A model generated the notes under the pieces. It saw only the letters and a program-made list of their open reading frames with translations. It did no database searches and was not told the origin of the DNA. Position numbers and translations under genes: made by a program. From the IMG/VR virus record IMGVR_UViG_3300008110_000030, positions 124,001-188,000 of that record: a DNA stretch of 64,000 nucleotides. One strand, written 5' to 3'. Shown here one piece after another: positions 2,383 through 61,207 of the stretch. The number at the start of each line of letters is the position of its first letter. Within the stretch, counting starts at the first letter, position 1.

Positions 2383-3120
2383 ATGAAAGACATACTTCAA
2401 GACATCGTAGGGCATACACACAATTTAGGCTTTTTGAACATTGTAAAAATTACAGGGGACAACGAAGGCACTAAAATTGACAGTATGGCCGATGACCGTA
2501 GCGTTATTATGCTAGGTGAAACAAATGCACCCGTTCCAGAGTTGGGTGGCGTTTTTGGAATGCCACAACTTAATAAATTAAAGTATTTGTTAGACTGCAC
2601 TGAATATAAAGAAAGTGCCAAAATTGATTTAGTATCAGCAGATAGGAATGGCGCAACTGTTCCAGTAGGTATTCACTTTGAAAATAAAGAAGGCGATTTT
2701 AAAAACGACTATCGCTTTATGAATACAGAAATTATTAATGAAAAATTAAAAAGCGTTAAGTTCAAAGTACCACAATGGGACGTAGAGCTGGAGCCAAGTG
2801 TTTCTAGTGTACAGCGTTTTAACTTTCAAGCAGGTGCTAACACAGAACACACAACGTTTGTTGCAAAAACTGATGGTGATAAACTAAAGTTTGTTTTTGG
2901 TGATCAAAGCACACACGGTGGCGAATTTGTATTTGCTACAGGTATCAGTGGCACACTAAACAAAGGCTGGACATGGCCCGTTGCACCAATTTTAGCAATT
3001 CTAAAAATTGCAGACGTTAACAATACTAAGATTAGTTTTTCTAATGGTGTAGGTGCTATGATGATTACTCTTGATAGCGGCATTGCAACTTACAAATACA
3101 TTGTTCCAGCACAAGCCTAA
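2383..3120 (+). CDS. DNA polymerase sliding clamp (gp45-like)
   Basis: 245 aa, clamp-sized alpha/beta protein directly after the polymerase; ends YKYIVPA as clamps do. Confidence 0.7.
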   Translation: MKDILQDIVGHTHNLGFLNIVKITGDNEGTKIDSMADDRSVIMLGETNAPVPELGGVFGMPQLNKLKYLLDCTEYKESAKIDLVSADRNGATVPVGIHFENKEGDFKNDYRFMNTEIINEKLKSVKFKVPQWDVELEPSVSSVQRFNFQAGANTEHTTFVAKTDGDKLKFVFGDQSTHGGEFVFATGISGTLNKGWTWPVAPILAILKIADVNNTKISFSNGVGAMMITLDSGIATYKYIVPAQA

Positions 3121-3122
3121 AT

Positions 3123-3476
3123 ATGATTAAAGGACTTCAGGGCATAACAGGAGTATCAGTAGGAGCTGGCAATACCAGCTTGCCTTATGTTAATCCAAAT
3201 CCCAATAACCCTATGACAGGTATGCTACGTATTAATGGCACTGAGATGGAAGTGTTTAATGGCTCTAGCTGGCAAATACTATCCACTAGCTATGCTACTG
3301 TAGGGTTAGATCAAGAAGTGCTTGATATCATACAATGGGCACGTAAGAAGCGTGATGAAGAAAAAGAAATGTTGGTTCTTGCCCAAACTAACTCAGCTGT
3401 TAAAAATGCGTTAGATGCTGTTGAACGAGCAAAAGAACAATTAAAAATAATAAAGGATCTATCAATTGAGCACTAA
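3123..3476 (+). CDS. Hypothetical protein with C-terminal coiled coil
   Basis: 117-aa ORF packed in the operon. Confidence 0.7.
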   Translation: MIKGLQGITGVSVGAGNTSLPYVNPNPNNPMTGMLRINGTEMEVFNGSSWQILSTSYATVGLDQEVLDIIQWARKKRDEEKEMLVLAQTNSAVKNALDAVERAKEQLKIIKDLSIEH

Positions 3477-39500: not shown

Positions 39501-42500
39501 GTTCCTTTTTCTCTAATAAATCCTTGATAAAATTTATACTGACTTGACTCGTCAGGTATCAAAGAATTTAAATATGTTCTTGGAACATAACCTATTAATT
39601 TTTGTGCGTATTTTTGTTGACTGTTATCAAAGTTAACACTATCTAAACTATAGAATTCTTCAAACTGACTAATCTTATATTCAAAGTTAGGCAACAACTG
39701 TGCAACTGGTTGCTTGCCTAGTAGTGTCCAATCTTCATAATTAAAAAGTTCTCTAGCTAATGTGCGAGCTTTAGCTTGATAATATTTTGTTTGGTATCTA
39801 ACAACATTTCCAATTTCATAATCAATGTTAGGTTCCCAATCATTAATCTTGGCGCTGTCATATACAAATCCTGGAATGTAAAAATCACCCTTCCAGCCGT
39901 CTGTCATGAACCCTTTAATTTTGAATCTCTTCTGTCTATATCCAGAAGTTGGTTCGTAAATTAGATCATTAAAAATTGTTTTATTGTCAAAAACTACAAC
40001 GTGTTCTTTTTGTACTAGACTAATTTTTACAAAATAAACACCATCAGCCGTGCCAGCAGTATCAATAACAAAAGAACCTTCTTGTCTAGAAATTCTTACT
40101 TTGGTTCTATCAATAGTAGTACCATCTGCTTTTAGTAGAGTATAATCATAAAAACTATCGTATAGATCATCAACGACAGAATCTTCACTTGTAAAATAAA
40201 TCTTTTCTGCAAAAGGAGAAAGACTGATTACTGAACTGGTAGACCAATTTTGTAGACTCCAGAATAAAAACTCTTTTCCTGCTAATTTCCAATCTGCAAT
40301 TACATCTAGCTCTGGTAAAAGATTTTCAAATTTAAATCCTAAGGATTTAACTTGTTCGCCGTAACCAAGTATAAAATCAAATACATCTTGTATAGAATTA
40401 TATTTTGTTCCATAAGGCACAATTGTATCAACGTCTTCAAAAGAATTTGGTACAAATGCTTCAACACCACCAATTGCTGGAAGGTAAGGAAGTGGATAAT
40501 ATAATCCTGGATCAAATGCCTGCTTAGTCAAGTGAGTTGAAATTGCTCTATAATATTGTTGGCCGTTAGCAACTACTAGTCCAGCATTTACAGTGGCGTT
40601 TGCAGACCAATATATAAATGGTTCAGTTGTTCCGCCTACAGATATTACAGGATCATTAGTAGCATGGATTGCTTTTTTAATTGTAAAATAAGGAGAGTTA
40701 GAATCATATCCTCTCACCATATATCCAGCTTCTGTTCTTTCAACAATAATACCAGACATTGTTAAAGTTTTAGTAGGAGACCCTGTAGAAAGAACTAATT
40801 GATAGTTTTCTTCTGGGACATACACTTTGTCAACTGTTTTATAAGATGTTACTGTTTCCAATGCAACTCTAAACTTATCCTTACTTGTAAATCCGCCAAC
40901 TTTATAAATTAAGTTTGATTGAATTCTATTTAGGTAGTTTTGTAATCTAAATGCTGGATTAGAAAATCTCTGTCTTAAATTTTCAACAATGTAAGGATGA
41001 TAACCTGTTGCATAAACAAAATTATTATCTATTGTATTTGAAAAAACCTTTAGTGCAGACGGACTCAGTCTTTCTAAAGAATCTTTATATACGATCTGAT
41101 TAGCAATATTAAAGACATTTCGTGAAGTGTCAAATCCTAAAGTTGCATACTTAGCTGGCATTATTAGCGCCATTGCTATTTGCACTGCAAAAGGATAGAT
41201 ATCACTTCTTCTCCAAGCAGTTTCTGCAGGACCCATATCACCAAATGACCAGTTAGTATATCTTGCAGAATAATCAAAATCTTTTACAGCATTGACTTGT
41301 AAAGGATCTTTTAAACTGCCGTATGAATCTACAGGGATAATATTAGACAGTCCTGGTCTTGCATATTTTTCATCATAGCCTTTTCTAACTCCATTTCGAA
41401 TATATCCATATTCCAAATCTTTCCACATAACATCATTACCAGATGTATACGGAGCAGGGCCGTATTCAGTTTCCCACCAAGTTGGCTTTTTATAGAAGCC
41501 TAACATTTCCCAAGGGCAGGTATGTGGTCTATCTGTATCGTAATGCTGTTTGTAAATTTTTCTCCAAGAGCCGGTGATAAATGCATTTCTATCAATTATG
41601 CCATTTGAATTTACGTATTTGAATCCAAAGTTGTTTAGGTAAATTTCATTTTCGTTTGCTGTATAGTCAATACTATAGATACCAACCCATTTTAAAAATT
41701 CATCTTCAATAGATTGGTCAAATTGCTCAGACGTGTATCCAGTTTTTCTAAATATGCTAGGCAAAATTTCATTTACATCTAAAATTCTTGGATCGTATTC
41801 AACTTTTAAATTGTTGTAAATTCGTTTTTCTAACTCTAATAATAGTTGATCTCTGTCATCGCCAAAGCAAACTGTAACTGACCCGTCATGTCCTTGTATA
41901 ACTGACGTTGGTTCAATATACGTGTCATCTAAGTAAATTGCTGGCTCAAAACTAGGATATAGTCCTAGTTTTGTTGGTGACATAGGCATCACTGCACCAT
42001 GAATATTATTAAAAACTCTAATTAAAATCTCATCACTTACTGATAGTGTATTAACGAATCTAACTAACGGATTGTTTACATCAAAAGAATAATCTTTATC
42101 AATGGTCAACTGCTCTCCGTTAACATATACTAATATTGCCTTTTTGCCAAACAAAAATCTATCGTAAATTTCTGATCCATATGCATACGCCTTAATATTT
42201 GTATCGTTAACAGTGTATGTATAATCTCGCTTGTTTAAGCCATACGGCAACATATCACTATAATAAAACATAGAAGCAGGAGTTTTATCTTTAGCAATAC
42301 TTAAAATTATCTTATCTAATGCATCTGGAATATTAGCATACTCTGCTAATTCTGTAAATTTTTGTAATACTAAAATTTTATATCTTTGATATTCCAATGC
42401 AGACCAACGAATAGAATGTATTAGATTATAATCTTTATTAGCTATTAGTGCGCCTGCCATTGCAACCAGACCGTCGTGTTGAACAAATCTTCTTCCGTAT

Positions 42501-44833
42501 TTGTCCAAGTTTTCTAAATCACGTAAATTATTTCTATCAATGGCAGTGTTTAAATCTTTTGATGCATTTAAAATAATAGAGTTTAAATGATCATTGATTT
42601 CAGCATAGCTTAAAAATCCTGGGAATTCATTGGTTGGATTGTTTACTAAATTTATTGGGGTTTCATAATACCCATCTTCTTTTTTGTCGTACGTTGGTAG
42701 AGCTTTGACTACTATAACATCGTTTTTGACTAATACAGTTGCTAACGTGATAAAGAAAGAGTCAAATGCTGTATCAATTCTAACGTCAAATTCAGTAGCG
42801 GTTAGTTTTTTTCCGTTCTTAAAAACTCGTACATTCTCTTTGGGAGTTCTAATATCAATACTGTCAAACTCAAATGCATCTTCGCCGCCAATTGCAATAC
42901 GTTGATCGATAATTTCTTGGATTGATAGTTTATTACACTTTACCCAACCATTAACATAGTTGTTGTTTTCTTTTAAAAATCCGTTTTTAGTATTGCCTAC
43001 TACCACTTGTCCATCAACAAAATATTCAAACGCATCTTCTGATAAACAATTTTCAAATGTGTAACCGCCAACGTTTGACACAGTTTTGTAAACAAGAGGA
43101 AAGCCTAAAATACTGTCATTGTTACCAACACCAATTTGATAGCCAAATACTCTAGAACCAGAAAAGTTTGTATCTTTATAGATATCGCTATTGGAGAAAC
43201 TTGCACCATTTGAATCAAAGATATCAAACAATGGTGATTGATTAATATGTTCTTTTTGTTGTGACTTTATCCATTCACCATTTTTAAAAACCCAAGATGT
43301 TCTACCATTTTTAATACCGCTAATAACAAGTAGTCCATCATCTAAATTTGGTAGTGAGTCTTCTGCCTCTTCTAAGTGAAGTTTCTTAACTCCGTTGATG
43401 TCAATAAACTGTACTTGATAAATTTTATTCTTTACATCTAAGTCAGTGTCTGAAAGAAATACAATTCTATTGCCGTCTTCTAGTGCTTTTCCGTCAATAT
43501 AATAGCCTAAAGAGCCTTCAATATTGCTAAAAGCGTCAGTAACTGTGTCATCTAAAAAATTAACATACTTTGTTATTTTAGAAAAATTAAACAGTTGCAT
43601 ATTTGGACGAAACTCAATAATAGGACGTTGAGCTCTATCAAATGATGTAAATGTTGGATCAGTATTATTCAATAGGGAACTAGTGTTCACCACATCAATG
43701 TGGAACCATCTATTATATCTACTCCATGGGTTTTTATCTTCACTTGCTCGATTAATCAAGATATAATCAGGGTTAACAGGATATTCTGAAACCTCATCAA
43801 AAGGTAACTCATCAAATCCAGTATCATCAAAAGATGTTTCAACGATTGTTGAATAGCCTTCGATTGTAAGTAGACTATTGTAGTCAACCAGAGTGATACT
43901 GTTTCCTACTCCCTCAACAATATAAGTTTTATCTCGATATTTTTCAGGAAACACTGTGTCTGAAAAAACAATCTTCATTCCATTTGACAAGTGTATTCCG
44001 TCTTTAATTTCGTAGGTCTTTTTACCTATAATTTCATTTTCAACATCTAGCTCTGTATTCTCTTTTTGGTCTCTAATTAAAAATCTGCCAAAAAGAGTGT
44101 TGTCATTTCCGTTGACATAAAACAGTGTACTTGGTGTGCTTTCTACTACATTGAAAATAACTGAACCTGATGTTGCTCCGTTATTTTGTACTCCATCCCA
44201 AGAATCAACATCTCCACTGCTTCTTTTATTTTTAATATAGAAAGACTGATCAACTGTATCAACTTCAAAGATGTAAGTAAATCCTCTGTACAAAGTAATT
44301 GTAGGATTAACTGCAATTTCATTTGTGCTAAAATTCCAATTGTCATCAACAATTTTTACTTTAATTGTACTAGTAACTTCTTTTTCTTTTCCGCTAATTC
44401 TAACTGTCGCTGGACCGCTAGGTAACCAAACATAATTTCTAAAATTAACAAACTTGTCTAAATCAATAAAGGTATTCCAAGTATAACTCTGTTGTCTAAA
44501 CAACTTATCTTGGTTACGAATATCTGCACCAAAGTACTTTAAACTATTGATAATGTCTTCAAAAGTTTTGTTAAACTCTACTTGATCTGTTACTGAATTT
44601 TTTATTACAATACCTGGTTCTAACTCATAGCGGTTTCTTAAATCAGTACCCTCATTGATATAGGAGTCACTAGCTGGCTTATAGTTTCCAATAATTTTAT
44701 CACCAATAAATCCGTCAACCTTCTTTAATGTTGGTTTCTCAATTAATTGGTCTATCGTTCCAGTTAAGAATTTTTCGTTTGCATCTGTTCTAAAGATTAC
44801 TGGAAGTAAGTCTACTGATTTTCTTTTACTCAT
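30590..44833 (-). CDS. Giant (4747 aa) baseplate wedge/structural protein (gp7-like position)
   Basis: Uninterrupted 14.2-kb ORF following the gp6-like gene; FG-GAP-like and CBM-like repeats; IKEIKPY motif. Confidence 0.8.
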   Translation of the reverse strand: MSKRKSVDLLPVIFRTDANEKFLTGTIDQLIEKPTLKKVDGFIGDKIIGNYKPASDSYINEGTDLRNRYELEPGIVIKNSVTDQVEFNKTFEDIINSLKYFGADIRNQDKLFRQQSYTWNTFIDLDKFVNFRNYVWLPSGPATVRISGKEKEVTSTIKVKIVDDNWNFSTNEIAVNPTITLYRGFTYIFEVDTVDQSFYIKNKRSSGDVDSWDGVQNNGATSGSVIFNVVESTPSTLFYVNGNDNTLFGRFLIRDQKENTELDVENEIIGKKTYEIKDGIHLSNGMKIVFSDTVFPEKYRDKTYIVEGVGNSITLVDYNSLLTIEGYSTIVETSFDDTGFDELPFDEVSEYPVNPDYILINRASEDKNPWSRYNRWFHIDVVNTSSLLNNTDPTFTSFDRAQRPIIEFRPNMQLFNFSKITKYVNFLDDTVTDAFSNIEGSLGYYIDGKALEDGNRIVFLSDTDLDVKNKIYQVQFIDINGVKKLHLEEAEDSLPNLDDGLLVISGIKNGRTSWVFKNGEWIKSQQKEHINQSPLFDIFDSNGASFSNSDIYKDTNFSGSRVFGYQIGVGNNDSILGFPLVYKTVSNVGGYTFENCLSEDAFEYFVDGQVVVGNTKNGFLKENNNYVNGWVKCNKLSIQEIIDQRIAIGGEDAFEFDSIDIRTPKENVRVFKNGKKLTATEFDVRIDTAFDSFFITLATVLVKNDVIVVKALPTYDKKEDGYYETPINLVNNPTNEFPGFLSYAEINDHLNSIILNASKDLNTAIDRNNLRDLENLDKYGRRFVQHDGLVAMAGALIANKDYNLIHSIRWSALEYQRYKILVLQKFTELAEYANIPDALDKIILSIAKDKTPASMFYYSDMLPYGLNKRDYTYTVNDTNIKAYAYGSEIYDRFLFGKKAILVYVNGEQLTIDKDYSFDVNNPLVRFVNTLSVSDEILIRVFNNIHGAVMPMSPTKLGLYPSFEPAIYLDDTYIEPTSVIQGHDGSVTVCFGDDRDQLLLELEKRIYNNLKVEYDPRILDVNEILPSIFRKTGYTSEQFDQSIEDEFLKWVGIYSIDYTANENEIYLNNFGFKYVNSNGIIDRNAFITGSWRKIYKQHYDTDRPHTCPWEMLGFYKKPTWWETEYGPAPYTSGNDVMWKDLEYGYIRNGVRKGYDEKYARPGLSNIIPVDSYGSLKDPLQVNAVKDFDYSARYTNWSFGDMGPAETAWRRSDIYPFAVQIAMALIMPAKYATLGFDTSRNVFNIANQIVYKDSLERLSPSALKVFSNTIDNNFVYATGYHPYIVENLRQRFSNPAFRLQNYLNRIQSNLIYKVGGFTSKDKFRVALETVTSYKTVDKVYVPEENYQLVLSTGSPTKTLTMSGIIVERTEAGYMVRGYDSNSPYFTIKKAIHATNDPVISVGGTTEPFIYWSANATVNAGLVVANGQQYYRAISTHLTKQAFDPGLYYPLPYLPAIGGVEAFVPNSFEDVDTIVPYGTKYNSIQDVFDFILGYGEQVKSLGFKFENLLPELDVIADWKLAGKEFLFWSLQNWSTSSVISLSPFAEKIYFTSEDSVVDDLYDSFYDYTLLKADGTTIDRTKVRISRQEGSFVIDTAGTADGVYFVKISLVQKEHVVVFDNKTIFNDLIYEPTSGYRQKRFKIKGFMTDGWKGDFYIPGFVYDSAKINDWEPNIDYEIGNVVRYQTKYYQAKARTLARELFNYEDWTLLGKQPVAQLLPNFEYKISQFEEFYSLDSVNFDNSQQKYAQKLIGYVPRTYLNSLIPDESSQYKFYQGFIREKGTTLPLEKFAVANNTATGAHISLQEEWAIRLGTFGGENSYEEIEFTLDQNKINQDPQIFEFEYNNLKSSLDKAYKVSLSDMQIRPADYNGQPWPTLDVSPVNGNGYSQYQKIPTAGYVRLDDVVFTGLYENNILTLSSSASLREGDTVWLAIDNSGNWGVKRYTLSPVTIINYTVDNANNLISFNTDVAHKLKLRDFVSISRLDDPLNGVYEVLGIPDGTTFVVKTAFNDIPTAGEILNGSMYYFASSRFANLDDLASIPGLARWQNCEFVWVDNVGDGTWAVLEKEANTKALPIRPRINQSGQKFGNTTIIAPVSKNIIVSATELERGRVYVYERNALGSEDVILHQSYLLEENFSDILTIQDVKNGVAIPEIQRLHGASLDCWENTSLTIRYIVSGAPNSSNAKWKVLGQALDPIKKVLDFNKSSSELFDEGAIKIVKFNNDLDEYRTEVVLASPIAQEGANFGHKVKFVGSDKPTLLVSSPGQDGGIGAIFVYYLDSSNVWQVYTVGGNPYNLRSAVTDVNSKSNFGSDIVSNKNGTVLAVSAPGHLKDRTQVHSGAVFIFRKDPGSYSYQLTQTIYADDYLESNDLLLKGVIKSYNTIAQIISFQASDNSIVRNNGSFIADGFRIGQSVIIAGSTNAGNSGEFVISELSVLRMAFKPLRSLTDETATTTITITGQGTIRNDRFGDKLAMSADGTALLISSDHSSTEKLDAGLVYVLKLQTNASYALDQKITSPATETGELFGSNLALSDDGKTLLVTAIGGGQATPVAFDTYTERYTDSAQRYGSEYVLNPTSAAAPLRTTFDTGSTRFVSKAQSSGAVYLYQKLGNKYVFGESLISGDSASFDGYGTGIATDGEFMLVGAPKYDLKVIGTLEDSNQLTTYTDSGTVVIFDKKRDIDQACGCGSSWSWSKVRVQEAIIDVDKIKKVISYNNSTLEIIDHYEIYDPIKGKLPSKVLNEIKYIQPFDPAVYTVALETSAKVRVDNKTTWLDDHVGEVWLDTSTLRFVWYEQGNNEFRANNWGKLFPGSTVDVYEWVKSDFRPSEWAQLADTTDGLALGVSGQPLNPDNTVLSINQYYDPVVNDFVNVYYFWVRNKITLPDLAFRNLSSFDCARIIEDPKGQGIKFASFLATNSLSLTNAKKSLNGDKINIDVYYQTSEKEINRHSHWQLVNENVTYLNLDPSIENKLIDSLVGQDVAGNPVPDPTLSPKLRYGTSYRPRQSWFKDRDLALKIMIEYVNEVLRKHDIVGKSNITSLEEVEDYPSISLGHYDEVIELSDEISLIGTNGKAQTKLSAEVINGRIVSVNIDDPGNGYKVAPTVRIYGDGQGATIQTAIDLNGRVVSVRIVNQGYGYTQIPKLIARPYAVLTILDTEIDKWAIYQYKNKAFVRESTQTVNVPKYWSYIDWVDPSYAVDVPATYAINFISDLESFIFETGSTVEIRTPGDGRKIILRKTAPGIGNYLDDYDLVFRENGTVQFNNKLYDKAAAGLGFDNVTRYDQGGFDETNTTELRIILNAIKDNIFTGDLASYWKKFVFVAVRHVLSEQLFVDWVYKTSFITPLVDAGTLDQDDVYRFNDFSYVEDFIKEIKPYKSKFRESTVSYNTTEKMGVGVTDFDLPAYVDSVTGKIKLPTSSMINNVYPYKHWGENYGFTVSDIRVGLAGENYITPPIVTIVPVSGDTGTGATAIAKISNGKLSSIIVTNPGSGYLTTPRVILTGGSNYLTNFVNGSAYAVLSNSKVRTNQIQMKFDRTSDKGLYTGEILNRNLDTDGITLNYVLAYPSTSTDTNYPALQDESTIKLFLNDAEISADNYRITFRNDLSTVITFNLALPARQNLRIQYIKNTLYTVDTFTQSSGESYTDTFKLTFPPELDTDKIIVRELNSSTNTGSEIITSDYLIQLRQVVETGFTKYVGYINFKNIPTPGSTITVQYAKNINIQNAVDRIITSYYPTANMPGKDVTQLIKGVEFGGVEIQGLNFSVSSGWDGLPWFTQGWDTFVNSYKDLLVISNGTTSTYELGYTPLLGTKINVYFDGVRVDDENYGTVNQTNNDALFNTITTNGSTSTLTLPQVPVTGTKIEIRQELSDGVNLPTDDIVLDTNITGGDFSTISDAGEIRFRTATGLSATDISLDGGEFLSVEHSPSTEELVKGEIFDTLSMTVFNSPGAGSNLISTKQFIMDGSTMQFVIQDTIGSGQEIFVLIGNFVAKENTDYTLTANSNGTTTVEIITTEYGVDQLSTTNTLALTVQKTTIGGNSILSRFSYTVTSANAGASSFEILSEVNYQDIGSYYISISNTSSLTKVAGRSKRAKIIITNTPTLTAGTVINILLFGSTVKTYSEIYNQEIVIDNNTTYTLTKPPGNIAPLHVMAAVTRLTSSTEDWKGPWEENVYYVINDTVLYNNVSYICKIGHTSTQTNSNLEFSAWASTTSYDVNDIVSFSGQYYICKVTHTSNTTTLTPDNIVYWGAHITNRPDEDTARIYWGLAPTQRMMPPETEYYEVTQNSQTFRLGENIPYLTRTLSISDIEVYKNGKIIVVGRDYEFDTIDNTVTMSSGVAQVGDVIAVCILRDSDYVIFGNQITFRSPSKIQAGQRVSVVTYTNHDENLIRREVFKTNPNRNEYKLSRPVYNINNVWVDVNGRPLIPNYDYQVVDRDYIQISNRFNLGNNDRVVVTSISDIVSSEAVSYRMFKDMTNAVQFKRLSKNSTVTLTKALLSTDREIEVSDTSIFGVVNVNNPKPSSIFVAGERIEFRSIVGNKLTNLTRGTLGTGVADSYPIGTKVFNVGNNETIPYREGYTIKTYKTPENYKFNQTTNRYQQYVNGNWVNVTTVASYTLTDFSFNEAIGLEDQVTVYMAGKILTKPVRGTNQLIRHDFSITHNSNEVNSQNQTGDLIVAPDFTITKVGNNYVLTVNPSVLNLADDSTVISNVDIKVVQKIGKIWYTLGGTTTIQQESTPQARFLQEFTAELPDKYYYGKLS

Positions 44834-54803: not shown

Positions 54804-55694
54804 ATGATAATAACGACTGTAAAGAGAAACAAATATCTTAACAACAAAGACCTACTGTTACAGATACACAAGAGCAAGAACACATACGGATCATTTATGG
54901 GTCCAGAATATGAAGATTACGACTTAATTTTACCTTCTGTTGATAAAATCAATGTAAGAACTGTTGCAGAAGCCAAGCGTAATAGGGCCAAACGATTAGG
55001 CACTAGGTTATATCAACAAAATAAAGCCCAAGGTATTAAGGACGTTAAACTAGTTGACTGCATAATTGATTACAAAAAAGTTCCAAAAACTGATTTAGTT
55101 TTTAGAATCATGACTCATGAACATGTTCCGCTTGCGCCTGGACGCAAGAAGACGGTAAAAAGCACAGCTGACGCTCATGAAAGATGCAATTTTCCTCCCT
55201 ATCAACATTGGGCATTCGATGCTAATGATGTACTGATATGTGTAGGAAAAAGTCATTGGAAGGGTCCTTTACAGACTGGAACGTTTTCCAAAGAACACGG
55301 AAGAATTACTGAAGAGCTTGGCAAAATGTATCTAATGCTAGCTGATAGATATGCTCAAAGAAGCAATTGGCGTGGGTATACGTATGTTGAAGAAATGAAA
55401 GGACAGGCTATTCTACAGCTAAGTCAAATTGGCTTACAGTTTGATGAATCCAAGTCTGAAAATCCATTTGCCTACTACACTGCCGCAGTAACAAATAGCT
55501 TTACCCGTGTGCTCAATATTGAGAAACGTATGCAAAATATTCGTGACGATATGTTAGAAGAAAGTGGGTTAACTCCTAGCTTTACAAGACAGAATCAACA
55601 AGAATATGCAGAAGAAACGGCACGTCAAGCTGCCTTGTATAAGGGAATGCGACAAGCAAAAAGTGAAGATACTCCAGAGGAAGAAGCTGAATGA
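54804..55694 (+). CDS. gp55: Late-transcription sigma factor (gp55-like)
   Basis: YLNNKDLL, NWRGYTYVEEM, FDESKSENPFAYYT; precedes gp47/gp46 as in T4. Confidence 0.85.
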   Translation: MIITTVKRNKYLNNKDLLLQIHKSKNTYGSFMGPEYEDYDLILPSVDKINVRTVAEAKRNRAKRLGTRLYQQNKAQGIKDVKLVDCIIDYKKVPKTDLVFRIMTHEHVPLAPGRKKTVKSTADAHERCNFPPYQHWAFDANDVLICVGKSHWKGPLQTGTFSKEHGRITEELGKMYLMLADRYAQRSNWRGYTYVEEMKGQAILQLSQIGLQFDESKSENPFAYYTAAVTNSFTRVLNIEKRMQNIRDDMLEESGLTPSFTRQNQQEYAEETARQAALYKGMRQAKSEDTPEEEAE

Positions 55695-56713
55695 CAAATC
55701 TTTTTAAGAAAGCAGCCTGTTTTACTGATATCCATTTTGGGTTGAAGAGTAATAGTCGTACACACAATGAAGATTGTGCTGATTTTGTTGATTGGTTTAT
55801 TGCTACTGCTAAGGAAAAGGGTGCAGAAACTTGCATTTTCTTAGGAGATTGGCATCATAATCGCTCAACAACTGACGTTAGTACAATGAATTATACAGTA
55901 AATGCACTAGAAAAACTTAACAGTGCATTTGATACTGTACACATTATTACAGGCAATCATGATCAATATTATAAGGACAAACGAGATCTACATAGTTTAG
56001 AATATGGCAGACTGTTTCCAAATATCAACATGGTTAATCATGCTTTCACAGAAGGAAATGTTACTATACTTCCCTGGCTAGTGGGCGACGAGTGGAAGAG
56101 CATTGAGAAAATCAAAAGCAAATACATATTTGGGCACTTTGAACTACCGTTGTTTTATATGAACGCTATGGTGCAAATGCCTGACCATGGAGAACTACAG
56201 CCCACTCACTTTAAACATCAGGACTATGTTTTTAGTGGTCACTTCCATAAAAGACAAAGCAAAGACAAAGTTCATTACATTGGCAATGCATTTCCGCACA
56301 ACTATGCTGACAGTTGGGATGACATGCGTGGTATGATGTTGTTGGAATGGGATAAGCCTCCTGAATATATTGATTGGCCTGACTGTCCTAAATATCGTTC
56401 TGTAAAATTAAGTAGACTTCTTGATGAAAAAGATAGTATAATGAAGGGTAAGATGTACTTACGTGTTACTCTTGACATTGATATTACCTTTGAGGAAGCT
56501 AACTTCATCAAAGAAACTTTTATGAAAGAGCATGATATTCGAGAACTAAGTTTGATAACAGAGAAGGATAACTTGGAAGGACTAATTGATGAAAACACCG
56601 ATGTTAAATTTGAAAGTGTAGATCAAATTGTCGCTGAACAGATTGTTGCCTTAGAGACTGGCACATATAATAACAATACTCTATTAAGCATTTATAACGG
56701 ACTTCATGTTTAA
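55691..56713 (+). CDS. gp47: Recombination nuclease Mre11/SbcD-like
   Basis: DIHFG, LGDWHH, GNHD, GHFE, SGHFH. Confidence 0.93.
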   Translation: MTNLFKKAACFTDIHFGLKSNSRTHNEDCADFVDWFIATAKEKGAETCIFLGDWHHNRSTTDVSTMNYTVNALEKLNSAFDTVHIITGNHDQYYKDKRDLHSLEYGRLFPNINMVNHAFTEGNVTILPWLVGDEWKSIEKIKSKYIFGHFELPLFYMNAMVQMPDHGELQPTHFKHQDYVFSGHFHKRQSKDKVHYIGNAFPHNYADSWDDMRGMMLLEWDKPPEYIDWPDCPKYRSVKLSRLLDEKDSIMKGKMYLRVTLDIDITFEEANFIKETFMKEHDIRELSLITEKDNLEGLIDENTDVKFESVDQIVAEQIVALETGTYNNNTLLSIYNGLHV

Positions 56714-58499
56714 ACTAAAAACAATAACAGTAAAAAACTTTATGAGTGTGGGCAACCAGACTCAAGCCGTGGATTTTGATAAGAATCATTTAACTTTGGT
56801 GTTGGGTGAGAACGTAGACTTGGGCGGCGATGACAGTGGTAGTCGTAATGGCACTGGAAAAACAACAATCATCAATGCTTTATGCTATGCATTGTATGGC
56901 GAAGCGTTGACCAAGATCAAAAAAGAAAATCTAATCAACAAGACAAACGGTAAAAATCTAGTTGTCACATGTGAATTTGAAATTAATGGAAGACAATATA
57001 AAATTGAAAGAGGTCGAAGACCAAACTTCTTAAAATTTTATGTTGACCACGTAGAGATCAAAGACGATTCACAAGCAGATGATGACGCACAAGGGGACAG
57101 TCGTGAAACGCAAAAGGCGATTGAATCCTTATTGGGCATGAGTCAAACAATGTTTAAGCACCTAGTGGCCTTAAACACATATACTGAGCCATTTCTAAGT
57201 ATGCGAGCAAACGATCAACGAGAAGTTATCGAGCAATTGCTTGGCATTACATTGTTAAGTGAGAAAGCAGAATTACTTAAAGTTCAAGTAAAAGAAATTA
57301 AAGATCAAATTCAAGCAGAAACTTTTAAAATCGACAGTATAAGGAGTAGTAATGAAAAAGTCCAACAATCAATTGACAGCCTCTCTACTAAAAGTAAAGC
57401 ATGGGAGTCCAAACGAGAACAAGATTGCGCCGGCTATCAGTCAGCGATTTCCGAATTGCGCTCTGTTGATATCGAAGGAGAAATTGAAAAACATTCTAGA
57501 CTCAAGGTGTATAACGAACTAACAGCTAAAATTAGTTCCTTAAACAAACAAAAAGCAACACTTGAGACTGCTGTTGGGCAAGCAGAAAAGACTGTTGGGA
57601 AGTATACTAGAGAGTTAGAACAACTTGATAGTAAAAAATGTCCCGCATGTGAACAAGAACTGCATGATCACAAGCATGATGAGATGAAAGAAACTGCTGC
57701 CAAGCACTTGACTGATTCAATATTGTATCAAGACAAAGTGTTAGCAGACCTTAATCTAGTTTTAAAAGAATTATCTGACATTGGCGACATCAATGGAAGA
57801 CCTTCTACCTATTATGATAGTGCAGAACAAGCGTACAATCATAAAAACAATGTTGAAAGTTTGAGCAAAGCACTTGCTGACAAGCAAGTAGAATTAAATC
57901 CTTACACTGAACAAGTGGACGAGTTAAGAAAAACTGCTTTGCAAGAGATTACGTGGGACACAGTTAATGAATTAACAAGTGTCAAAGACCATATGGAGTT
58001 CTTACACAAACTGTTAACCAGCAAGGATAGCTTTATCCGTAAGAAAATTATTGATCAGAATCTTGCATATCTAAATAAACGCCTTAGTTACTATCTAAAT
58101 AAAGCAGGACTGCCGCATCAAGTTAAGTTTTTAAACGATCTAAACGTCGAGATTACACAGCTCGGGCAGGATTTAGACTTTGATAATCTCAGTAGAGGTG
58201 AACGCAATAGACTTATTTTAAGTCTAAGCTGGGCGTTCCGTGATGTATGGGAAAGTTTATATCATCCAATCAACTTGTTGTTCATTGATGAATTGATTGA
58301 TGCAGGTATGGACTCTGCAGGAGTTGAGGGTGCTCTAGCAATCCTTAAAAAGATGGCTAGGGAACGAGATAAAAATATCTATTTGATCAGTCACAAAGAT
58401 GAACTTGCAGGTCGAGTAAACAGTATTCTAAGAGTTATTAAAGAAAACGGGTTTACCAGCTACTCAACTGATACAGATGTTATTGAAACACCAGTATAA
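56706..58499 (+). CDS. gp46: Recombination ATPase Rad50/SbcC-like
   Basis: KNFMS, NGTGKTT, CPAC zinc hook, LSRGE, FIDE, ISH. Confidence 0.94.
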   Translation: MFKLKTITVKNFMSVGNQTQAVDFDKNHLTLVLGENVDLGGDDSGSRNGTGKTTIINALCYALYGEALTKIKKENLINKTNGKNLVVTCEFEINGRQYKIERGRRPNFLKFYVDHVEIKDDSQADDDAQGDSRETQKAIESLLGMSQTMFKHLVALNTYTEPFLSMRANDQREVIEQLLGITLLSEKAELLKVQVKEIKDQIQAETFKIDSIRSSNEKVQQSIDSLSTKSKAWESKREQDCAGYQSAISELRSVDIEGEIEKHSRLKVYNELTAKISSLNKQKATLETAVGQAEKTVGKYTRELEQLDSKKCPACEQELHDHKHDEMKETAAKHLTDSILYQDKVLADLNLVLKELSDIGDINGRPSTYYDSAEQAYNHKNNVESLSKALADKQVELNPYTEQVDELRKTALQEITWDTVNELTSVKDHMEFLHKLLTSKDSFIRKKIIDQNLAYLNKRLSYYLNKAGLPHQVKFLNDLNVEITQLGQDLDFDNLSRGERNRLILSLSWAFRDVWESLYHPINLLFIDELIDAGMDSAGVEGALAILKKMARERDKNIYLISHKDELAGRVNSILRVIKENGFTSYSTDTDVIETPV

Positions 58500-58825: not shown

Positions 58826-59020
58826 ATGTCAGATACTATTAAATTAATTGAAGATTCACTAGCACAATGGAAGGCTGAGGACGAAAAATTCGTCAAGGGC
58901 AACAGTGCCGCTGGTACAAGAGCTCGTAAGGCATTGGCAGAACTAGCAAAAGCAGTTAAAGTTCGCCGTAATGAAATCACAGCAGAGAAGAACGCTCGCA
59001 AAGAAGCTAAGGCGTCCTAA
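58826..59020 (+). CDS. Histone H1-like (Hc1-family) small DNA-binding protein
   Basis: KFVKGNSAAGTRARKALAELAKAVKVRRNEI; AAGGA RBS. Confidence 0.7.
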   Translation: MSDTIKLIEDSLAQWKAEDEKFVKGNSAAGTRARKALAELAKAVKVRRNEITAEKNARKEAKAS

Positions 59021-59184
59021 TGTCTGATGCTGACGTTAAGAAAATACTTCAACTTGAACAAACTGTAAAACGATTAGAGTTTCAAGTTGCACAACTAGCT
59101 CAAAGGATTAATTATTTTGAGCGTGAACGTCAACGAATCAAAACTGATATAAATCACATTGCAGGGATCCTTAGAAAGCAATGA
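59020..59184 (+). CDS. Small coiled-coil protein (54 aa, not in ORF track)
   Basis: MSDADVKKILQLEQTVKRLEFQVAQL...; TAATG and ATGA coupling on both sides. Confidence 0.65.
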   Translation: MSDADVKKILQLEQTVKRLEFQVAQLAQRINYFERERQRIKTDINHIAGILRKQ

Positions 59185-59627
59185 CATGGTTGCACGAAGG
59201 GATCACTGTTGATCAGCTTCCAGAAGAGTGTGTTGGGTTTGTATATATTATAACCAACACACTCACTGGTCGCAAATACATAGGCAAAAAATTAGCTAAG
59301 TTCGCAAAAACTACTTACAGAGTACAAAAATTAAAAAATGGTACTAAGAAGAAAAAACGAATTAGAAGCAAAGTAGATAGCGACTGGCAAGAATATTATG
59401 GCTCAAGTGACGAACTAAACAAAGACATAGAGACATTAGGCAAAGAAAACTTCAAACGTGAAATTCTCCACTATTGCACGAGTAAGGCAGAAACTTCATA
59501 TCTAGAAGCCAAAGAGCAATTTGAACGTAAGGTATTGGAAACTGATGAGTATTACAATGGCCACATTCAAGTTCGCGTCCACGGCTCACACATAATCAAA
59601 AAATTTAAGGCTCAACTTAACAGTTAA
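59181..59627 (+). CDS. Minimal GIY-YIG endonuclease
   Basis: GFVYIITN...RKYIGKK, YYGSS, FKREIL, E and YYN; no C-terminal DNA-binding domain. Confidence 0.85.
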   Translation: MTWLHEGITVDQLPEECVGFVYIITNTLTGRKYIGKKLAKFAKTTYRVQKLKNGTKKKKRIRSKVDSDWQEYYGSSDELNKDIETLGKENFKREILHYCTSKAETSYLEAKEQFERKVLETDEYYNGHIQVRVHGSHIIKKFKAQLNS

Positions 59628-59630
59628 TGA

Positions 59631-59990
59631 CTCGCACAGGTTAATATCATGTGCCTAGAGACAACCCGATAATAAGGGGGACGGAAGCCTTGCCGCTGTA
59701 GCAAGCACTCAACTAGTATCCTTAACAGGACCACGATAGCAAGCACGCCTGCTGTTTAGTTGTTTGAATAGAGTCAAAAAAGGCAAAAAGAAGGGAGAAA
59801 AACCCTACGTTTGTAAGTGTGTTAGCGTACATTTGCAAACTGCCGTCATAATGAAGACGCAACTCGAGGTACCGGATGACCGCCTCTGTAATGTTGTAAC
59901 GCTAAGTGGTTGTGCTACTCGGATAATATAGACCATTTCACTTCGCCCGCCAGGGCGAAGTGTGGCTGATTAATCTGGATAATATCGTAA
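59631..59990 (+). ncRNA. Putative large structured non-coding RNA
   Basis: ORF-free; about 45% G+C by hand count; at least 8 hairpins including 12-bp and 10-bp stems, G-U pairs and a 7-bp loop-downstream pairing. Confidence 0.6.
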
Positions 59991-60119
59991 ACACTTCGTG
60001 TTTTATAATTGTTCTTATTATTAAATGAAATAAATTGTGAGTTATGAAATAACGAACAAGTGAGCGTTAGCTCACTGATAAATCATACTACTGATATCAA
60101 CTTATACTTTAAGGATAAC

Positions 60120-60338
60120 TCAGATTAAAGGCATACCGGACTCTTTGGTCCACTCCATATTTTCCTTTACGATTTCATTGATGGCTTGTTTCTGCTCGTA
60201 GGTCAACTGAAATGCCTCATCAGTGGTAAGGCCACCACGCATGTACCATGCTAACCTGAATGTATCTTTCTCAATGGCTTTTGCTTCTTTGTCGAGTCCT
60301 GCTGATATCTCAACAATTTCAGGAAGAGTTTTAGACAA
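60120..60338 (-). CDS. Baseplate hub assembly factor (gp51-like)
   Basis: Short ORF (WYMRGG) directly after the gp26-like gene; start uncertain. Confidence 0.55.
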   Translation of the reverse strand: MSKTLPEIVEISAGLDKEAKAIEKDTFRLAWYMRGGLTTDEAFQLTYEQKQAINEIVKENMEWTKESGMPLI

Positions 60339-60343
60339 AAGCC

Positions 60344-61207
60344 TTAGACGAAAAAATTTGAATAATCAAACTCAAAAGGAATTTCCATCTGTGCAGGTGA
60401 TCCTAGATCCACATACTGCTGTGGAGTCTGTATGGTCATGAAACGTTTGTTGTTTCTATCATTAAGAGTTCTAAACGCTTTGGCCACAACATCAAAGAAT
60501 TCTTTATCACAATTTTCTAAAAACTCTTTAATTTGTAATGGATCAGTAGTGTTACCTTCAGTGGTATCAATGCGTTTAATTCCGTTCAACATTTGCATTA
60601 GAGTAGCATCTGCTAGGCGTCCCATGGCATTTGCTGCCATGTCAATACGCTGTTCTTCACTTAAATCTTCGTTTTGTATAATAGTTTGTAACACACGGTT
60701 ACTGTCAAAACTTAGTAAGCTGTAGTCAGTTAACACTTTGTAGGTAACTGGCTCGATGAATATGGTCATATCGTTGCTTACTTTTACTTCTTCTTCCCAG
60801 TAAGTATTTTCTACGATCTGATCTAAAAGTGGTCTGAGGTCAATTTCAAACGGCTCTTTCTCATTCGTGCCTGGAATACTCACATCCATGGTCATCTTTT
60901 CACCATATGTGGCAATACGTATAGCAATTAATATTGCATCCAAATCTAGACTTGGACATTTCCAAGGATCTAAAATATTTGGAACACAGCTTTTAATCAC
61001 ATCTACTGTGGTACGTCCGTTGAACAAGGCATCGGGAGTTCTAATCAACAGTTCGTCTTTGACTGTTAATCCATAAACTGGAAACTCGCCGTTGTCTGGC
61101 ATTTCCAAACTGCCCTCAGGCCAAAAGCGTCCTTGGCTGGGCAATTTTAGAAATAATTTTGGTCTTCTCATAAATGAAGACAGGGGATTTTTACGTGAAC
61201 TTTCCAT
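60344..61207 (-). CDS. gp26: Baseplate hub assembly chaperone (gp26-like)
   Basis: LKLPSQG, LTVKDEL, DLDAILIAIRIATYGE. Confidence 0.8.
   Translation of the reverse strand: MESSRKNPLSSFMRRPKLFLKLPSQGRFWPEGSLEMPDNGEFPVYGLTVKDELLIRTPDALFNGRTTVDVIKSCVPNILDPWKCPSLDLDAILIAIRIATYGEKMTMDVSIPGTNEKEPFEIDLRPLLDQIVENTYWEEEVKVSNDMTIFIEPVTYKVLTDYSLLSFDSNRVLQTIIQNEDLSEEQRIDMAANAMGRLADATLMQMLNGIKRIDTTEGNTTDPLQIKEFLENCDKEFFDVVAKAFRTLNDRNNKRFMTIQTPQQYVDLGSPAQMEIPFEFDYSNFFV

What the first reader, a model, noticed from the sequence alone, without database searches (positions are those of the whole stretch)
59181..59990. Minimal GIY-YIG nuclease followed immediately by a ~360-nt structured RNA with a possible pseudoknot: candidate nuclease-RNA system
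SEEN: the 148-aa GIY-YIG is only the catalytic module plus a very basic insert (KKLAKFAKTTYRVQKLKNGTKKKKRIRSK), with no NUMOD/HTH recognition domain. It is translationally coupled to the upstream genes. The ORF-free region right after its stop is 163/360 G+C (59641-60000), far above the other AT-rich spacers. It folds into nested helices: GCACA/TGTGC (59634-38/59650-54); CTTGC/GCAAG (59689-93/59701-05); a junction CAACTAG/TTAGTTG (59710-16/59756-62) enclosing TCCT/AGGA and TAGCA/TGCTG; GGCA/TGCC (59782-85/59841-44) enclosing AGGG/CCCT and a 12-bp stem with two G-U pairs (59809-20/59829-40); GCAAC/GTTGT with GAGG/CCTC; and a perfect 10-bp stem (59939-48/59953-62). The loop TTAGCGT (59822-28) is exactly complementary to ACGCTAA (59899-905), which would form a pseudoknot. 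G-U pairs in this orientation favour a + strand RNA. KNOWN: compact nucleases paired with structured RNAs exist (HEARO/IscB, TnpB omegaRNA), and phage GIY-YIG homing nucleases normally carry their own DNA-binding domain. INFERENCE: the RNA may be a scaffold or guide for the nuclease, or an independent phage ncRNA or ribozyme. I do not recognise it as tRNA, tmRNA, RNase P or a group I/II intron core.
Basis: partly seen in the sequence, partly recalled or inferred. Interest (0 to 1): 0.88.

Follow-up and report, generated by a model that had tools for sequence, protein, structure and literature searches.

The report
Large orphan RNA beside phage nuclease
The gene-free stretch after a small phage nuclease gene is a real folded RNA of about 380 bases whose first third is the already catalogued 'Polynucleobacter-1' motif. 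The same RNA occurs without that nuclease in bacterial islands, so it is most likely an independent RNA of unknown job, and it carries a pair of short boxes that always mutate together.

Summary
59181-59627 encodes a 148-aa GIY-YIG protein (Pfam SegE_GIY-YIG, 1.4e-33). 59628-~60006 is a plus-strand structured RNA.

It is not unrecognised: 59629-59765 matches Rfam RF01718 (Polynucleobacter-1 RNA) at 83.9 bits against a threshold of 37. Weinberg et al. 2010 already placed that motif downstream of the PSSM2_218 gene family, which is this GIY-YIG family.

New here:
- The RNA is about 380 nt in large-myophage contigs and about 560 nt in Burkholderiales islands.
- Covariation supports eleven helices, three of them pseudoknot pairings.
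- A 3' module carries two boxes (A-CUC-N7-G and A-UCU-N7-A) whose N7 is identical within a genome. It changed at least 37 times in step.

The guide/scaffold reading is poorly supported:
- In 11 of 186 phage loci a PD-(D/E)XK nuclease replaces GIY-YIG.
- In 6 loci another gene lies between the nuclease and the RNA.
- Close GIY-YIG homologues sit elsewhere without the RNA.
- The 27 bacterial loci scanned (23 with profile-detected RNA) lack this nuclease.

Best reading: an independent, mobile-element-borne RNA made as the tail of the nuclease operon and acting in trans through its boxes. Function remains unknown.

The parts
59181..59627 (+). 148-aa GIY-YIG protein gene (phrog_447 family, the same family as P-SSM2 PSSM2_218). 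It has a catalytic module plus a basic beta-hairpin insert and no separate DNA-binding domain.
   Evidence: Pfam PF19835 at 1.4e-33. phrog_447 at 1.4e-38. Alignment with PSSM2_218 and others shows invariant Y22, Y33, R93, E94, N126. AF2 pLDDT is 86 and the insert forms strands 40-50/56-66.
59628..60006 (+). Full-length structured RNA of about 380 nt, an extended Polynucleobacter-1 family member.
   Evidence: A profile built from homologues matches 59628-60017 at 335 bits, and 186 loci match nearly end to end. Fold z-score is -2.66 on the plus strand and -0.76 on the minus strand. G-U 776 versus A-C 171.
59629..59765 (+). 5' domain, equal to Rfam RF01718 Polynucleobacter-1 RNA.
   Evidence: 83.9 bits against a gathering score of 37, model positions 1-141 of 141. 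10 of 10 main-type relatives score 71-116 bits.
59629..59642 (+). Pseudoknot 1: the 5' tail 59629-32 pairs with the loop 59639-42 of the first hairpin (59634-38/59650-54).
   Evidence: 59630:59641 is G-C in 49 and A-U in 30 sequences, with 0 non-pairs. 59629:59642 shows G-C, A-U and G-U.
59687..59762 (+). Hairpin 59687-93/59701-06, plus a three-way junction closed by 59710-15/59757-62 that encloses 59719-21/59728-30 and 59736-40/59751-55.
   Evidence: Several pair types at most positions, for example 59714:59758 C-G 45 / A-U 22 / U-A 11.
59809..59840 (+). Long hairpin whose loop (59822-28) forms pseudoknot 2 with 59899-59905.
   Evidence: The top 5 pairs covary. Pseudoknot pairs 59825:59902 are G-C 70 / A-U 10, 59826:59901 C-G 68 / U-A 12, and 59827:59900 G-C 65 / A-U 15, all canonical.
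59845..59897 (+). Helix 59859-63/59893-97 encloses hairpin 59866-69/59883-86. The loop of that hairpin (59876-80) pairs back to 59845-49 (pseudoknot 3).
   Evidence: 59847:59878 is U-A 50 / C-G 30. 59848:59877 is G-C 62 / A-U 16. 59860:59896 is G-C 34 / C-G 29 / U-A 8. The same topology covaries in the bacterial copies.
59917..59929 (+). Box R1 (A-CUC-GGAUAAU-A-U).
   Evidence: The N7 core is identical to R2 in 78-79 of 79 sequences, across at least 37 inferred changes.
59939..59962 (+). Conserved G+C hairpin between the two boxes.
   Evidence: The inner 8 pairs are 93-100% canonical, with covariation at 59944:59957. It is present in phage and bacterial copies.
59973..59985 (+). Box R2 (A-UCU-GGAUAAU-A-U).
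   Evidence: It differs from R1 only by transitions at the three prefix positions, and usually at position +7, in both phage and bacterial copies.
59991..60004 (+). Small hairpin with a UUC(G) loop followed by a run of U. This is the likely 3' end of the RNA.
   Evidence: Sequence conservation of the family stops here. The hairpin is present with varied sequence in most relatives. It was not called by the stricter terminator scan.
60059..60076 (-). Terminator-like hairpin of the convergent minus-strand operon (72-aa ORF, baseplate hub). It bounds the element on the right.
   Evidence: Terminator scan. ORFs 60120-60338 and 60344-61207 lie on the minus strand, and the second matches T4_baseplate / phrog_150.

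Best explanation
59628-~60006 encodes a member of an orphan family of large, highly structured non-coding RNAs. The Rfam 'Polynucleobacter-1' motif is only the 5' third of this family. The family is carried by mobile genomes of freshwater Burkholderiales: large T4-like/jumbo myophages, and integrase-bearing chromosomal islands.

Shown:
- In the phage the RNA starts within a few bases of the stop codon of the last gene of the rightward gp47-gp46-...-nuclease unit.
- There is no conserved promoter in front of it.
- It ends at a small hairpin plus U-run, facing the terminator of the convergent baseplate operon.
- It folds into two domains locked by three covariation-supported pseudoknots.
- Its 3' module carries two boxes, A-CUC-N7-G and A-UCU-N7-A, that flank a G+C hairpin.

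Inferred: the RNA is made as the 3' tail of the nuclease operon's transcript and probably trimmed from it.

Inferred mechanism: the folded core is a scaffold. The two boxes are the working surface. Because they are identical in N7 and differ elsewhere only by transitions, both can pair with one and the same partner sequence, 5'-U-rc(N7)-GGG-U-3', or bind one sequence-specific factor twice. That partner is not encoded nearby.

The GIY-YIG gene is a separate gene that shares the operon. Its swap with a PD-(D/E)XK nuclease, and its occurrence at other loci, fit free-standing homing-type nuclease cassettes parked next to a conserved sequence.
For: Family and extent. RF01718 match at 83.9 bits. The full-length profile hits 186 viral loci. 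Weinberg 2010 supplement: the motif lies 'downstream of GOS11034 ... homology to PSSM2_218', and its '3' half is not always detected'. PSSM2_218 aligns with the window protein at 38% identity.

Structure. Double-sided covariation in 11 helices, including 3 pseudoknots. G-U/A-C is 776/171. Fold z-score is -2.66 on the plus strand only.

Independence from GIY-YIG.
- 27 bacterial loci matched the motif's 5' core pattern; the RNA profile matched 23 of them, Rfam confirmed the 7 scanned, and tblastn found no phage-type GIY-YIG in any. Their neighbours are DUF6641 and a 188-aa tyrosine recombinase.
- PD-(D/E)XK (PF24608, 2e-25) replaces GIY-YIG in 11 loci, including one with the main-type RNA.
- 6 loci have an intervening gene.
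- GIY-YIG at 72-76% identity occurs outside the gp46/hub locus without the RNA.
- Melnitz, C48C1 and S-SRM01 homologues have no RF01718 match.
- In ACP17 and S-SRM01 the gene sits alone on its strand among opposite-strand genes.

Co-transcription. Different upstream genes all abut the same conserved RNA 5' end, with no shared promoter.

Boxes. N7 is identical in 78-79 of 79 sequences, while the three polymorphic sites changed 16, 9 and 12 times on a tree built without those columns. The R1/R2 differences are transitions only. The same architecture, with other N7 sequences, occurs in bacterial and divergent phage copies.
Against: - No transcript data, so the ends and any processing are inferred.
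- No partner for the boxes was found in cis, in 2.5-10 kb flanks, or in the 64-kb window.
- The fixed CUC/UCU difference could mark distinct roles for the two boxes rather than wobble equivalence.
- A nuclease gene lies upstream in every informative phage locus (183/183). A purely accidental neighbour would not be expected to show this, although the whole gp46-to-hub block is syntenic.
- The GIY-YIG protein lacks the DNA-binding domain that characterised homing endonucleases have.
Confidence: 0.5

Rival explanations
1. Nuclease-RNA system. The RNA is a cofactor, scaffold or guide for whichever nuclease is encoded just upstream, and the twin N7 boxes act as short programmable recognition segments.
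For: - A nuclease gene in the same orientation lies upstream in 183 of 183 informative phage loci, usually ending 0-60 nt before the RNA.
- Two unrelated nuclease folds occupy the same slot, as in module swapping.
- The boxes are the only fast-changing part of an otherwise conserved RNA.
- The protein has a long basic beta-hairpin insert, which is longer in the RNA-linked clade.
Against: - Bacterial copies lack this nuclease, and their conserved neighbour DUF6641 shows no nuclease fold or motif.
- One RNA would have to serve two unrelated folds.
- Close GIY-YIG homologues exist without the RNA, and there are 779 phage records of the family; none of the three sampled (Melnitz, C48C1, S-SRM01) has an RF01718 match.
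- No GIY-YIG residue covaries with box state beyond background.
- No target complementary to the boxes lies in the flanks.
- The whole block is syntenic, so adjacency may be inherited.
Confidence: 0.13
2. Parasitic link. The GIY-YIG and PD-(D/E)XK genes are free-standing homing-type endonuclease genes that target the neighbouring, highly conserved RNA gene in genomes lacking them. Fast box turnover would then be target-site escape.
For: - Alternative nuclease families occupy one site.
- The family is found at unrelated positions, and as a lone-strand insertion, in other phages.
- PADLOC and PHROG neighbours are 'homing endonuclease' models.
- The RNA gene is the most conserved DNA next to the insertion point.
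Against: - No nuclease-free version of the locus was seen among 183 phage loci.
- The protein has no recognisable DNA-binding domain.
- The family is near-universal in cyanomyophages (339 Synechococcus phage records), unlike sporadic homing genes.
- Escape does not explain why the two boxes stay identical, or why bacterial copies without the nuclease have them too.
Confidence: 0.2
3. Self-processing or processed RNA. The folded core is a ribozyme, or the substrate of one endonuclease, that cuts at both boxes. This releases the roughly 56-nt hairpin unit, as unit-length RNAs are released from repeat arrays.
For: - It is a large RNA with many invariant unpaired nucleotides and three pseudoknots.
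- Two equivalent sites bracket a conserved hairpin at a fixed spacing of 56-72 nt in all lineages.
Against: - No match to any ribozyme family in Rfam, even at E up to 10.
- No internal guide complementary to the boxes.
- Only 12-13 nt are repeated, not whole units.
- There are no experimental data.
Confidence: 0.1
4. Cis-acting 3' element. The structure only stabilises, terminates or regulates the upstream operon's mRNA.
For: It always sits at the 3' end of a transcription unit, at a convergent junction, and ends with a hairpin plus U-run.
Against: - About 380 nt with three pseudoknots and invariant single-stranded blocks is far more than a stabiliser needs.
- In the bacterial islands it is transcribed divergently from its neighbour and is followed by variable cargo in either orientation.
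Confidence: 0.07

Closest known systems
Polynucleobacter-1 RNA motif (Rfam RF01718; Weinberg et al. 2010, PMC2864571)
   Same: The first 137 nt match the whole model well above threshold. The helices and conserved loops are the same, the position downstream of PSSM2_218-family genes is the same, and the freshwater/Burkholderiales habitat is the same.
   Different: The Rfam model stops at about 141 nt. Here the conserved RNA continues for another 240 nt or so (about 420 nt in bacteria), with two more pseudoknots and the twin-box module. The authors found it in no sequenced phage, whereas here it is in 186 viral contigs, some of 220-355 kb. The neighbouring gene was not identified as a GIY-YIG nuclease.
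Large orphan structured RNAs of phages and mobile elements (GOLLD, ROOL, HEARO before its assignment to IscB)
   Same: It is a long, pseudoknotted, covarying RNA carried by phages and integrative elements, found by comparative genomics, with function unknown (from knowledge of Weinberg 2010/2017).
   Different: There is no sequence or model match to any of them. It is smaller than GOLLD and ROOL. It has the twin identical boxes.
TnpB/IscB guide RNAs (omegaRNA)
   Same: The RNA begins at the 3' end of a compact nuclease gene, and it has a conserved scaffold plus a short variable segment.
   Different: The nuclease is GIY-YIG or PD-(D/E)XK, not RuvC/HNH. The variable segment is 7 nt, internal and duplicated, not a terminal guide of 16-20 nt. 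No transposon ends are present. The RNA exists without the nuclease, and the nuclease without the RNA.
Free-standing GIY-YIG homing endonucleases of T4-like phages (Seg proteins)
   Same: The GIY-YIG module is closest to the SegE N-terminal domain. The gene is intergenic and sits next to a conserved gene. It can be replaced by a different nuclease family at the same site.
   Different: At 148 aa it has no C-terminal DNA-binding domain. It carries a basic beta-hairpin insert instead. No empty site was observed.

Membership tests
Rfam RF01718 Polynucleobacter-1 RNA | Covariance-model score at or above the curated gathering score, over the whole model | tested here: met
   83.9 bits against 37, model 1-141/141, E 2.5e-16.
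Rfam RF01718 Polynucleobacter-1 RNA | The model's helices are kept by compensatory changes among relatives | tested here: met
   The helices within the RF01718 span that were counted (H1, H3, H4, H5, H6) show two to four pair types each in 80 sequences; the model's remaining hairpin (59662-77) was not scored because its alignment is ambiguous. 10 of 10 relatives score 71-116 bits.
Rfam RF01718 Polynucleobacter-1 RNA | Lies downstream of a GOS11034 / PSSM2_218-family gene (as the authors described) | tested here: met
   PSSM2_218 (145 aa) aligns with the window protein at 38% identity, with all catalytic positions conserved.
RNA-guided nuclease systems (TnpB/IscB-type) | Obligate co-occurrence of one nuclease family with its RNA | tested here: not met
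   Bacterial copies lack it. PD-(D/E)XK replaces it in 11 loci. GIY-YIG occurs without the RNA at other loci.
RNA-guided nuclease systems (TnpB/IscB-type) | A guide segment at an RNA end, complementary to DNA next to the element | tested here: not met
   The only variable segments are internal 7-nt twin boxes. No complement was found in flanks or window.
RNA-guided nuclease systems (TnpB/IscB-type) | RNA-dependent target cleavage | not testable with these tools
   Needs biochemistry.
GIY-YIG nuclease superfamily | GIY and YIG strands plus conserved Arg, Glu and Asn of the active site | tested here: met
   PF19835 at 1.4e-33. Y22, Y33, R93, E94 and N126 are invariant in 9 distant and 28 close homologues.
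Seg-type homing endonucleases | Separate C-terminal DNA-binding domain (NUMOD/HTH/zinc finger) | tested here: not met
   There is no second Pfam domain. The protein ends about 20 residues after the catalytic core.
Seg-type homing endonucleases | Sporadic presence, with homologous empty sites in relatives | tested here: inconclusive
   There is a nuclease swap, and copies occur at other loci. However, no nuclease-free locus was seen among 183.
tRNA, tmRNA, RNase P, group I/II introns, known ribozymes | Match to the family model | tested here: not met
   ARAGORN found none. Rfam at E up to 10 on 59400-60200 gave only RF01718, a 20-bit sub-threshold cow-rumen-2 hit and noise.
Type III antitoxin-like repeat RNAs | Tandem repeats of a whole unit of about 36 nt | tested here: not met
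   Only 12-13 nt are repeated, twice, around a non-repeated hairpin.

The most novel reading that the evidence does not exclude
The twin boxes are programmable recognition segments of an RNA that works together with the upstream, exchangeable nuclease module (GIY-YIG or PD-(D/E)XK). That would make this an RNA-directed nuclease system built on nuclease folds never before seen with a guide RNA. A variant reading is that the RNA clamps two copies of one cellular RNA, such as a tRNA, through the boxes.
Probability: 0.12. Interest if true: 0.9.

Novelty: new member of a known kind. Interest (0 to 1): 0.58.

Why it matters
Polynucleobacter-1 has sat in Rfam since 2010 as a 141-nt motif of unknown function, seen in a handful of sequences. 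This locus shows three things.
- It is the front end of a much larger RNA with three pseudoknots.
- It is widespread in large freshwater phages as well as in bacterial islands.
- It carries a rare evolutionary signature: two short boxes that have changed dozens of times and always together.

Large, intricately folded orphan RNAs have repeatedly turned out to be ribozymes or RNP cores. The twin boxes give a concrete handle for finding the partner, through pull-downs, compensatory mutants, or whole-genome covariation.

The work also corrects a widespread mis-annotation. The 'NAD synthetase' of phrog_447 / PSSM2_218 is a GIY-YIG nuclease-like protein.

Tried and rejected
- blastn of 59100-60150 against 50,697 phage records found no match.
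- PDB sequence search with the GIY-YIG protein gave only a 0.16 E-value chance hit, with no match to solved GIY-YIG enzymes.
- The AF2 model (pLDDT 86) searched against PDB by Foldseek gave nothing below E 0.27.
- The DUF6641 AF2 model (pLDDT 82) searched against PDB gave nothing below E 0.23, so no nuclease could be shown next to the bacterial copies.
- PADLOC gave only a weak 'homing endonuclease' hit for GIY-YIG and nothing for the island proteins.
- Cis partner for the boxes. The only complementary stretch is the U-rich linker 59760-67. It pairs through G-U/A-U, never covaries, and is replaced by a locally paired sequence in the bacterial copies. It was rejected as the reason for box identity.
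- Gene conversion as the cause of box identity is unlikely, because position +7 stays G in R1 and A in R2 between concerted positions 6 and 8.
- Pairing between the R1 box and the R2 prefix (4 bp) is not conserved in bacteria.
- The extra GGATAATAT copies in the window (5 on the plus strand against 0.8 expected) share no context and lie inside two long minus-strand ORFs. They were left as a weak lead.
- A GIY-YIG-like cargo gene after the RNA in one bacterial locus (L216) is 1 of 27 loci and has no Pfam support, so it is not treated as an association.
- The cow-rumen-2 (RF02947) resemblance of 59809-59908 scored 20 bits and did not recur in 12 relatives at E up to 5.
- tRNA genes near the islands: one in 20 loci.
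- A literature search found no follow-up on the motif, DUF6641, or a GIY-YIG-linked RNA.
Full report
**What is at the coordinates.**
- The window carries T4-type genes: gp47-like 55691-56713 and gp46-like 56706-58499. After them come small overlapping ORFs, including an Hc1-like histone-like protein at 58826-59020.
- Next is a 148-aa ORF at 59181-59627. It matches Pfam SegE_GIY-YIG over the whole profile (1.4e-33) and nothing else, and it matches phrog_447.
- 59628-60119 has no credible ORF. The next genes, a 72-aa ORF and a baseplate hub, run the other way.
- G+C of 59641-60000 is 163/360, against 35.9% for the window and 26-27% for the neighbouring spacers.

**It is a known RNA family, in part.**
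- Rfam gives one hit above threshold in the whole window: RF01718 Polynucleobacter-1 RNA at 59629-59765 on the plus strand. It scores 83.9 bits against a gathering score of 37 and covers the model end to end.
- The motif comes from Weinberg et al. 2010 (PMC2864571). Their supplement says that most examples lie downstream of genes of family GOS11034 'with possible homology to PSSM2_218 in cyanophage P-SSM2', that the 3' half is not always detected, and that no example was found in a sequenced phage.
- Their alignment file shows flanks that resemble 59766-59990.
- PSSM2_218, annotated 'NAD synthetase', aligns with the window protein at 38% identity, and all GIY-YIG catalytic positions are conserved.
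- So the nuclease-RNA adjacency was already recorded in 2010, without the gene being recognised as a GIY-YIG protein.

**The RNA is much longer than the Rfam model.**
- I collected 80 close relatives of the protein and 120 matches to a core RNA pattern from IMG/VR.
- Both halves of the ORF-free region are conserved at the nucleotide level downstream of proteins that are only 58-100% identical.
- A profile built from these sequences matches 186 of 204 loci, nearly all from model position 3 to about 385. In the window it matches 59628-60017.
- Conservation begins a few bases before the GIY-YIG stop codon. It ends at a small hairpin with a UUC(G) loop followed by U's (59991-60004).

**Structure.**
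- On 80 non-identical full-length sequences, double-sided changes support eleven helices.
- These include three pseudoknot pairings:
  - the 5' tail 59629-32 with the first hairpin loop 59639-42;
  - 59845-49 with the loop 59876-80 of an enclosed hairpin.
- G-U pairs outnumber A-C by 776 to 171. Only the plus strand folds better than shuffles (z -2.66 against -0.76).
- ARAGORN and Rfam find no tRNA, tmRNA, RNase P, intron or ribozyme.

**Is the RNA tied to the GIY-YIG protein?**
- In the 186 phage loci, GIY-YIG is directly upstream in 166, and upstream with one intervening 260-320-aa gene in 6.
- In 11 loci it is replaced by a 171-173-aa PD-(D/E)XK protein (PF24608, 2e-25). The remaining loci are cut off.
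- One PD-(D/E)XK locus (L194) carries the main-type RNA in the same gp46 / Hc1-like / nuclease / RNA / hub arrangement.
- The whole block from gp46 to the hub is syntenic across these contigs. Adjacency alone is therefore weak evidence.
- Three relatives of the protein at 72-76% identity lie outside this block and are followed by a membrane-protein gene, not the RNA.
- More distant family members in isolated phages (Melnitz, C48C1, S-SRM01) have no RF01718 match. In ACP17 and S-SRM01 the gene sits alone on its strand.
- The basic insert is present across the family and is only longer in the RNA-linked clade. AF2 models it as a long beta-hairpin.
- No protein column tracks the variable RNA boxes beyond what control RNA columns show.

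**Bacterial copies.**
- A strict core pattern found 27 loci in genomes of Polynucleobacter, Limnohabitans and other Burkholderiales. These include complete chromosomes.
- Rfam confirms RF01718 at 79-97 bits in all 7 of these loci that were scanned. tblastn finds no phage-type GIY-YIG.
- The conserved neighbours are a divergent DUF6641 gene, variable cargo, and a 188-aa tyrosine recombinase.
- The bacterial RNA is about 560 nt and keeps the phage topology. The loop-to-upstream pairing covaries (GUUUU/AAAAC against CUUC/GAAG), and the 3' module is the same.
- DUF6641 gave a confident model but no fold match, so a nuclease next to the bacterial copies is not shown.

**The twin boxes.**
- Near the 3' end, two direct repeats flank a conserved G+C hairpin: R1 at 59917-29 and R2 at 59973-85.
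- Mutual information flagged them as columns that covary by identity, not complementarity.
- In the main phage group the 7-nt core takes at least eight forms (for example GGAUAAU, AGAUGAU, AGAUGAG, once GCAUAAU), and it is the same in both boxes of a genome.
- On a tree built without these columns, the three polymorphic sites change 16, 9 and 12 times. The partner site mirrors the change in 78/79, 79/79 and 79/79 sequences.
- R1 and R2 differ only by transitions: CUC against UCU before the core, and usually G against A after it. This holds in phage and bacterial copies alike.
- Bacterial copies carry other cores (AGCGAAAG, AGAGAAAG, GGAGAAAG, AUCGAA, AGCAAA), again identical in pairs.
- A divergent RNA class at the same phage locus, missed by Rfam and by my profile, keeps the module with cores such as ACAUGAA.
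- Gene conversion is unlikely, because a fixed difference sits between concerted positions.
- I found no complementary partner in the RNA, in the flanks, or in the window.
- The pattern is what one expects if both boxes pair with one sequence, 5'-U-rc(N7)-GGG-U-3', using wobble where they differ, or if both bind one sequence-specific factor. This is inference, and the partner is unknown.

**Most likely reading.**
- This is an independent large structured RNA of mobile genomes. In the phage it is made as the tail of the nuclease operon's transcript.
- Different upstream genes abut the same RNA 5' end, with no shared promoter.
- The RNA probably acts in trans through its boxes.
- The nuclease genes are most simply separate, exchangeable cassettes.
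- A true nuclease-RNA partnership keeps a modest probability, because a nuclease is upstream in every informative phage locus.

**Context.**
- The gp46-like protein is closest (49%) to that of Pseudomonas jumbo phage PA5oct.
- Related contigs reach 220-355 kb, so the host genome is probably a large or jumbo myophage of freshwater Burkholderiales.

**Limits.**
- All phage copies come from metagenomic contigs.
- There are no expression data.
- My covariation counts use MAFFT alignments and my own scripts, not R-scape.
- Some bacterial hits are from bins that may be mis-assigned, though isolates and complete chromosomes are among them.

Noticed in passing
window 30590-44833 (-): A single 4747-aa ORF on the minus strand. 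That is a giant protein for a phage. Two of the extra GGATAATAT copies lie inside it.
   Followed up: no
window 58826-59020 (+): A 64-aa protein matching Pfam Hc1 (chlamydial histone H1-like, 9e-14). It lies two genes upstream of the nuclease and is conserved at this position in about 107 related loci.
   Followed up: partly
L194:5657-6172 and L087, L111, L114, L138, L139, L143, L148, L150, L197, L203: A PDDEXK_15 (PF24608) nuclease occupies the slot of the GIY-YIG gene directly upstream of the RNA, with three different RNA subtypes.
   Followed up: yes
L032, L056, L057, L058 (downstream of the GIY-YIG gene, about 2920-3400): A divergent RNA of about 470 nt at the same gp46...hub locus. It is not detected by RF01718 or by my profile, but it keeps the CACUAUCC block and the twin-box module (ACUC-ACAUGAA-G / AUCU-ACAUGAA-A).
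   Followed up: partly
L205-L231 (bacterial genome loci): The RNA sits in an island with a divergent DUF6641 gene, a hot spot of variable cargo right after the RNA, then a 188-aa tyrosine recombinase and conserved 256-aa and 262-aa proteins of unknown function. The near-identical core in several genera suggests horizontal spread.
   Followed up: partly
L216:1960-2450 (-): In Polynucleobacter rarus, the cargo gene right after the RNA begins with what looks by eye like GIY...YIG motifs. It is cut by a run of N, has no Pfam support, and is seen in 1 of 27 loci.
   Followed up: partly
phage records (P-SSM2 PSSM2_218, S-SRM01, phiN3, P-RSM4 and many others): The phrog_447 family is widely annotated 'NAD synthetase'. 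The sequence evidence here says GIY-YIG nuclease-like, so the annotation looks like a propagated error.
   Followed up: partly
window 59809-59908: A sub-threshold resemblance (20 bits, E 0.45) to Rfam cow-rumen-2 RNA (RF02947). It shares the UUAGC loop and the GCCG..CAU and GGAUGACC blocks. It was not reproduced in relatives at E up to 5.
   Followed up: partly
window 40494, 41335, 53071: Three further plus-strand copies of GGATAATAT, making 5 in all against 0.8 expected. All lie inside long minus-strand ORFs, so those mRNAs would carry the 9-nt complement of the boxes. They share no common context.
   Followed up: partly
L097, L118, L155, L179, L181, L045, L192: Genes of 260-320 aa of unknown function, in at least three unrelated families, are inserted between the nuclease gene and the RNA. 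The RNA 5' end is unchanged.
   Followed up: partly
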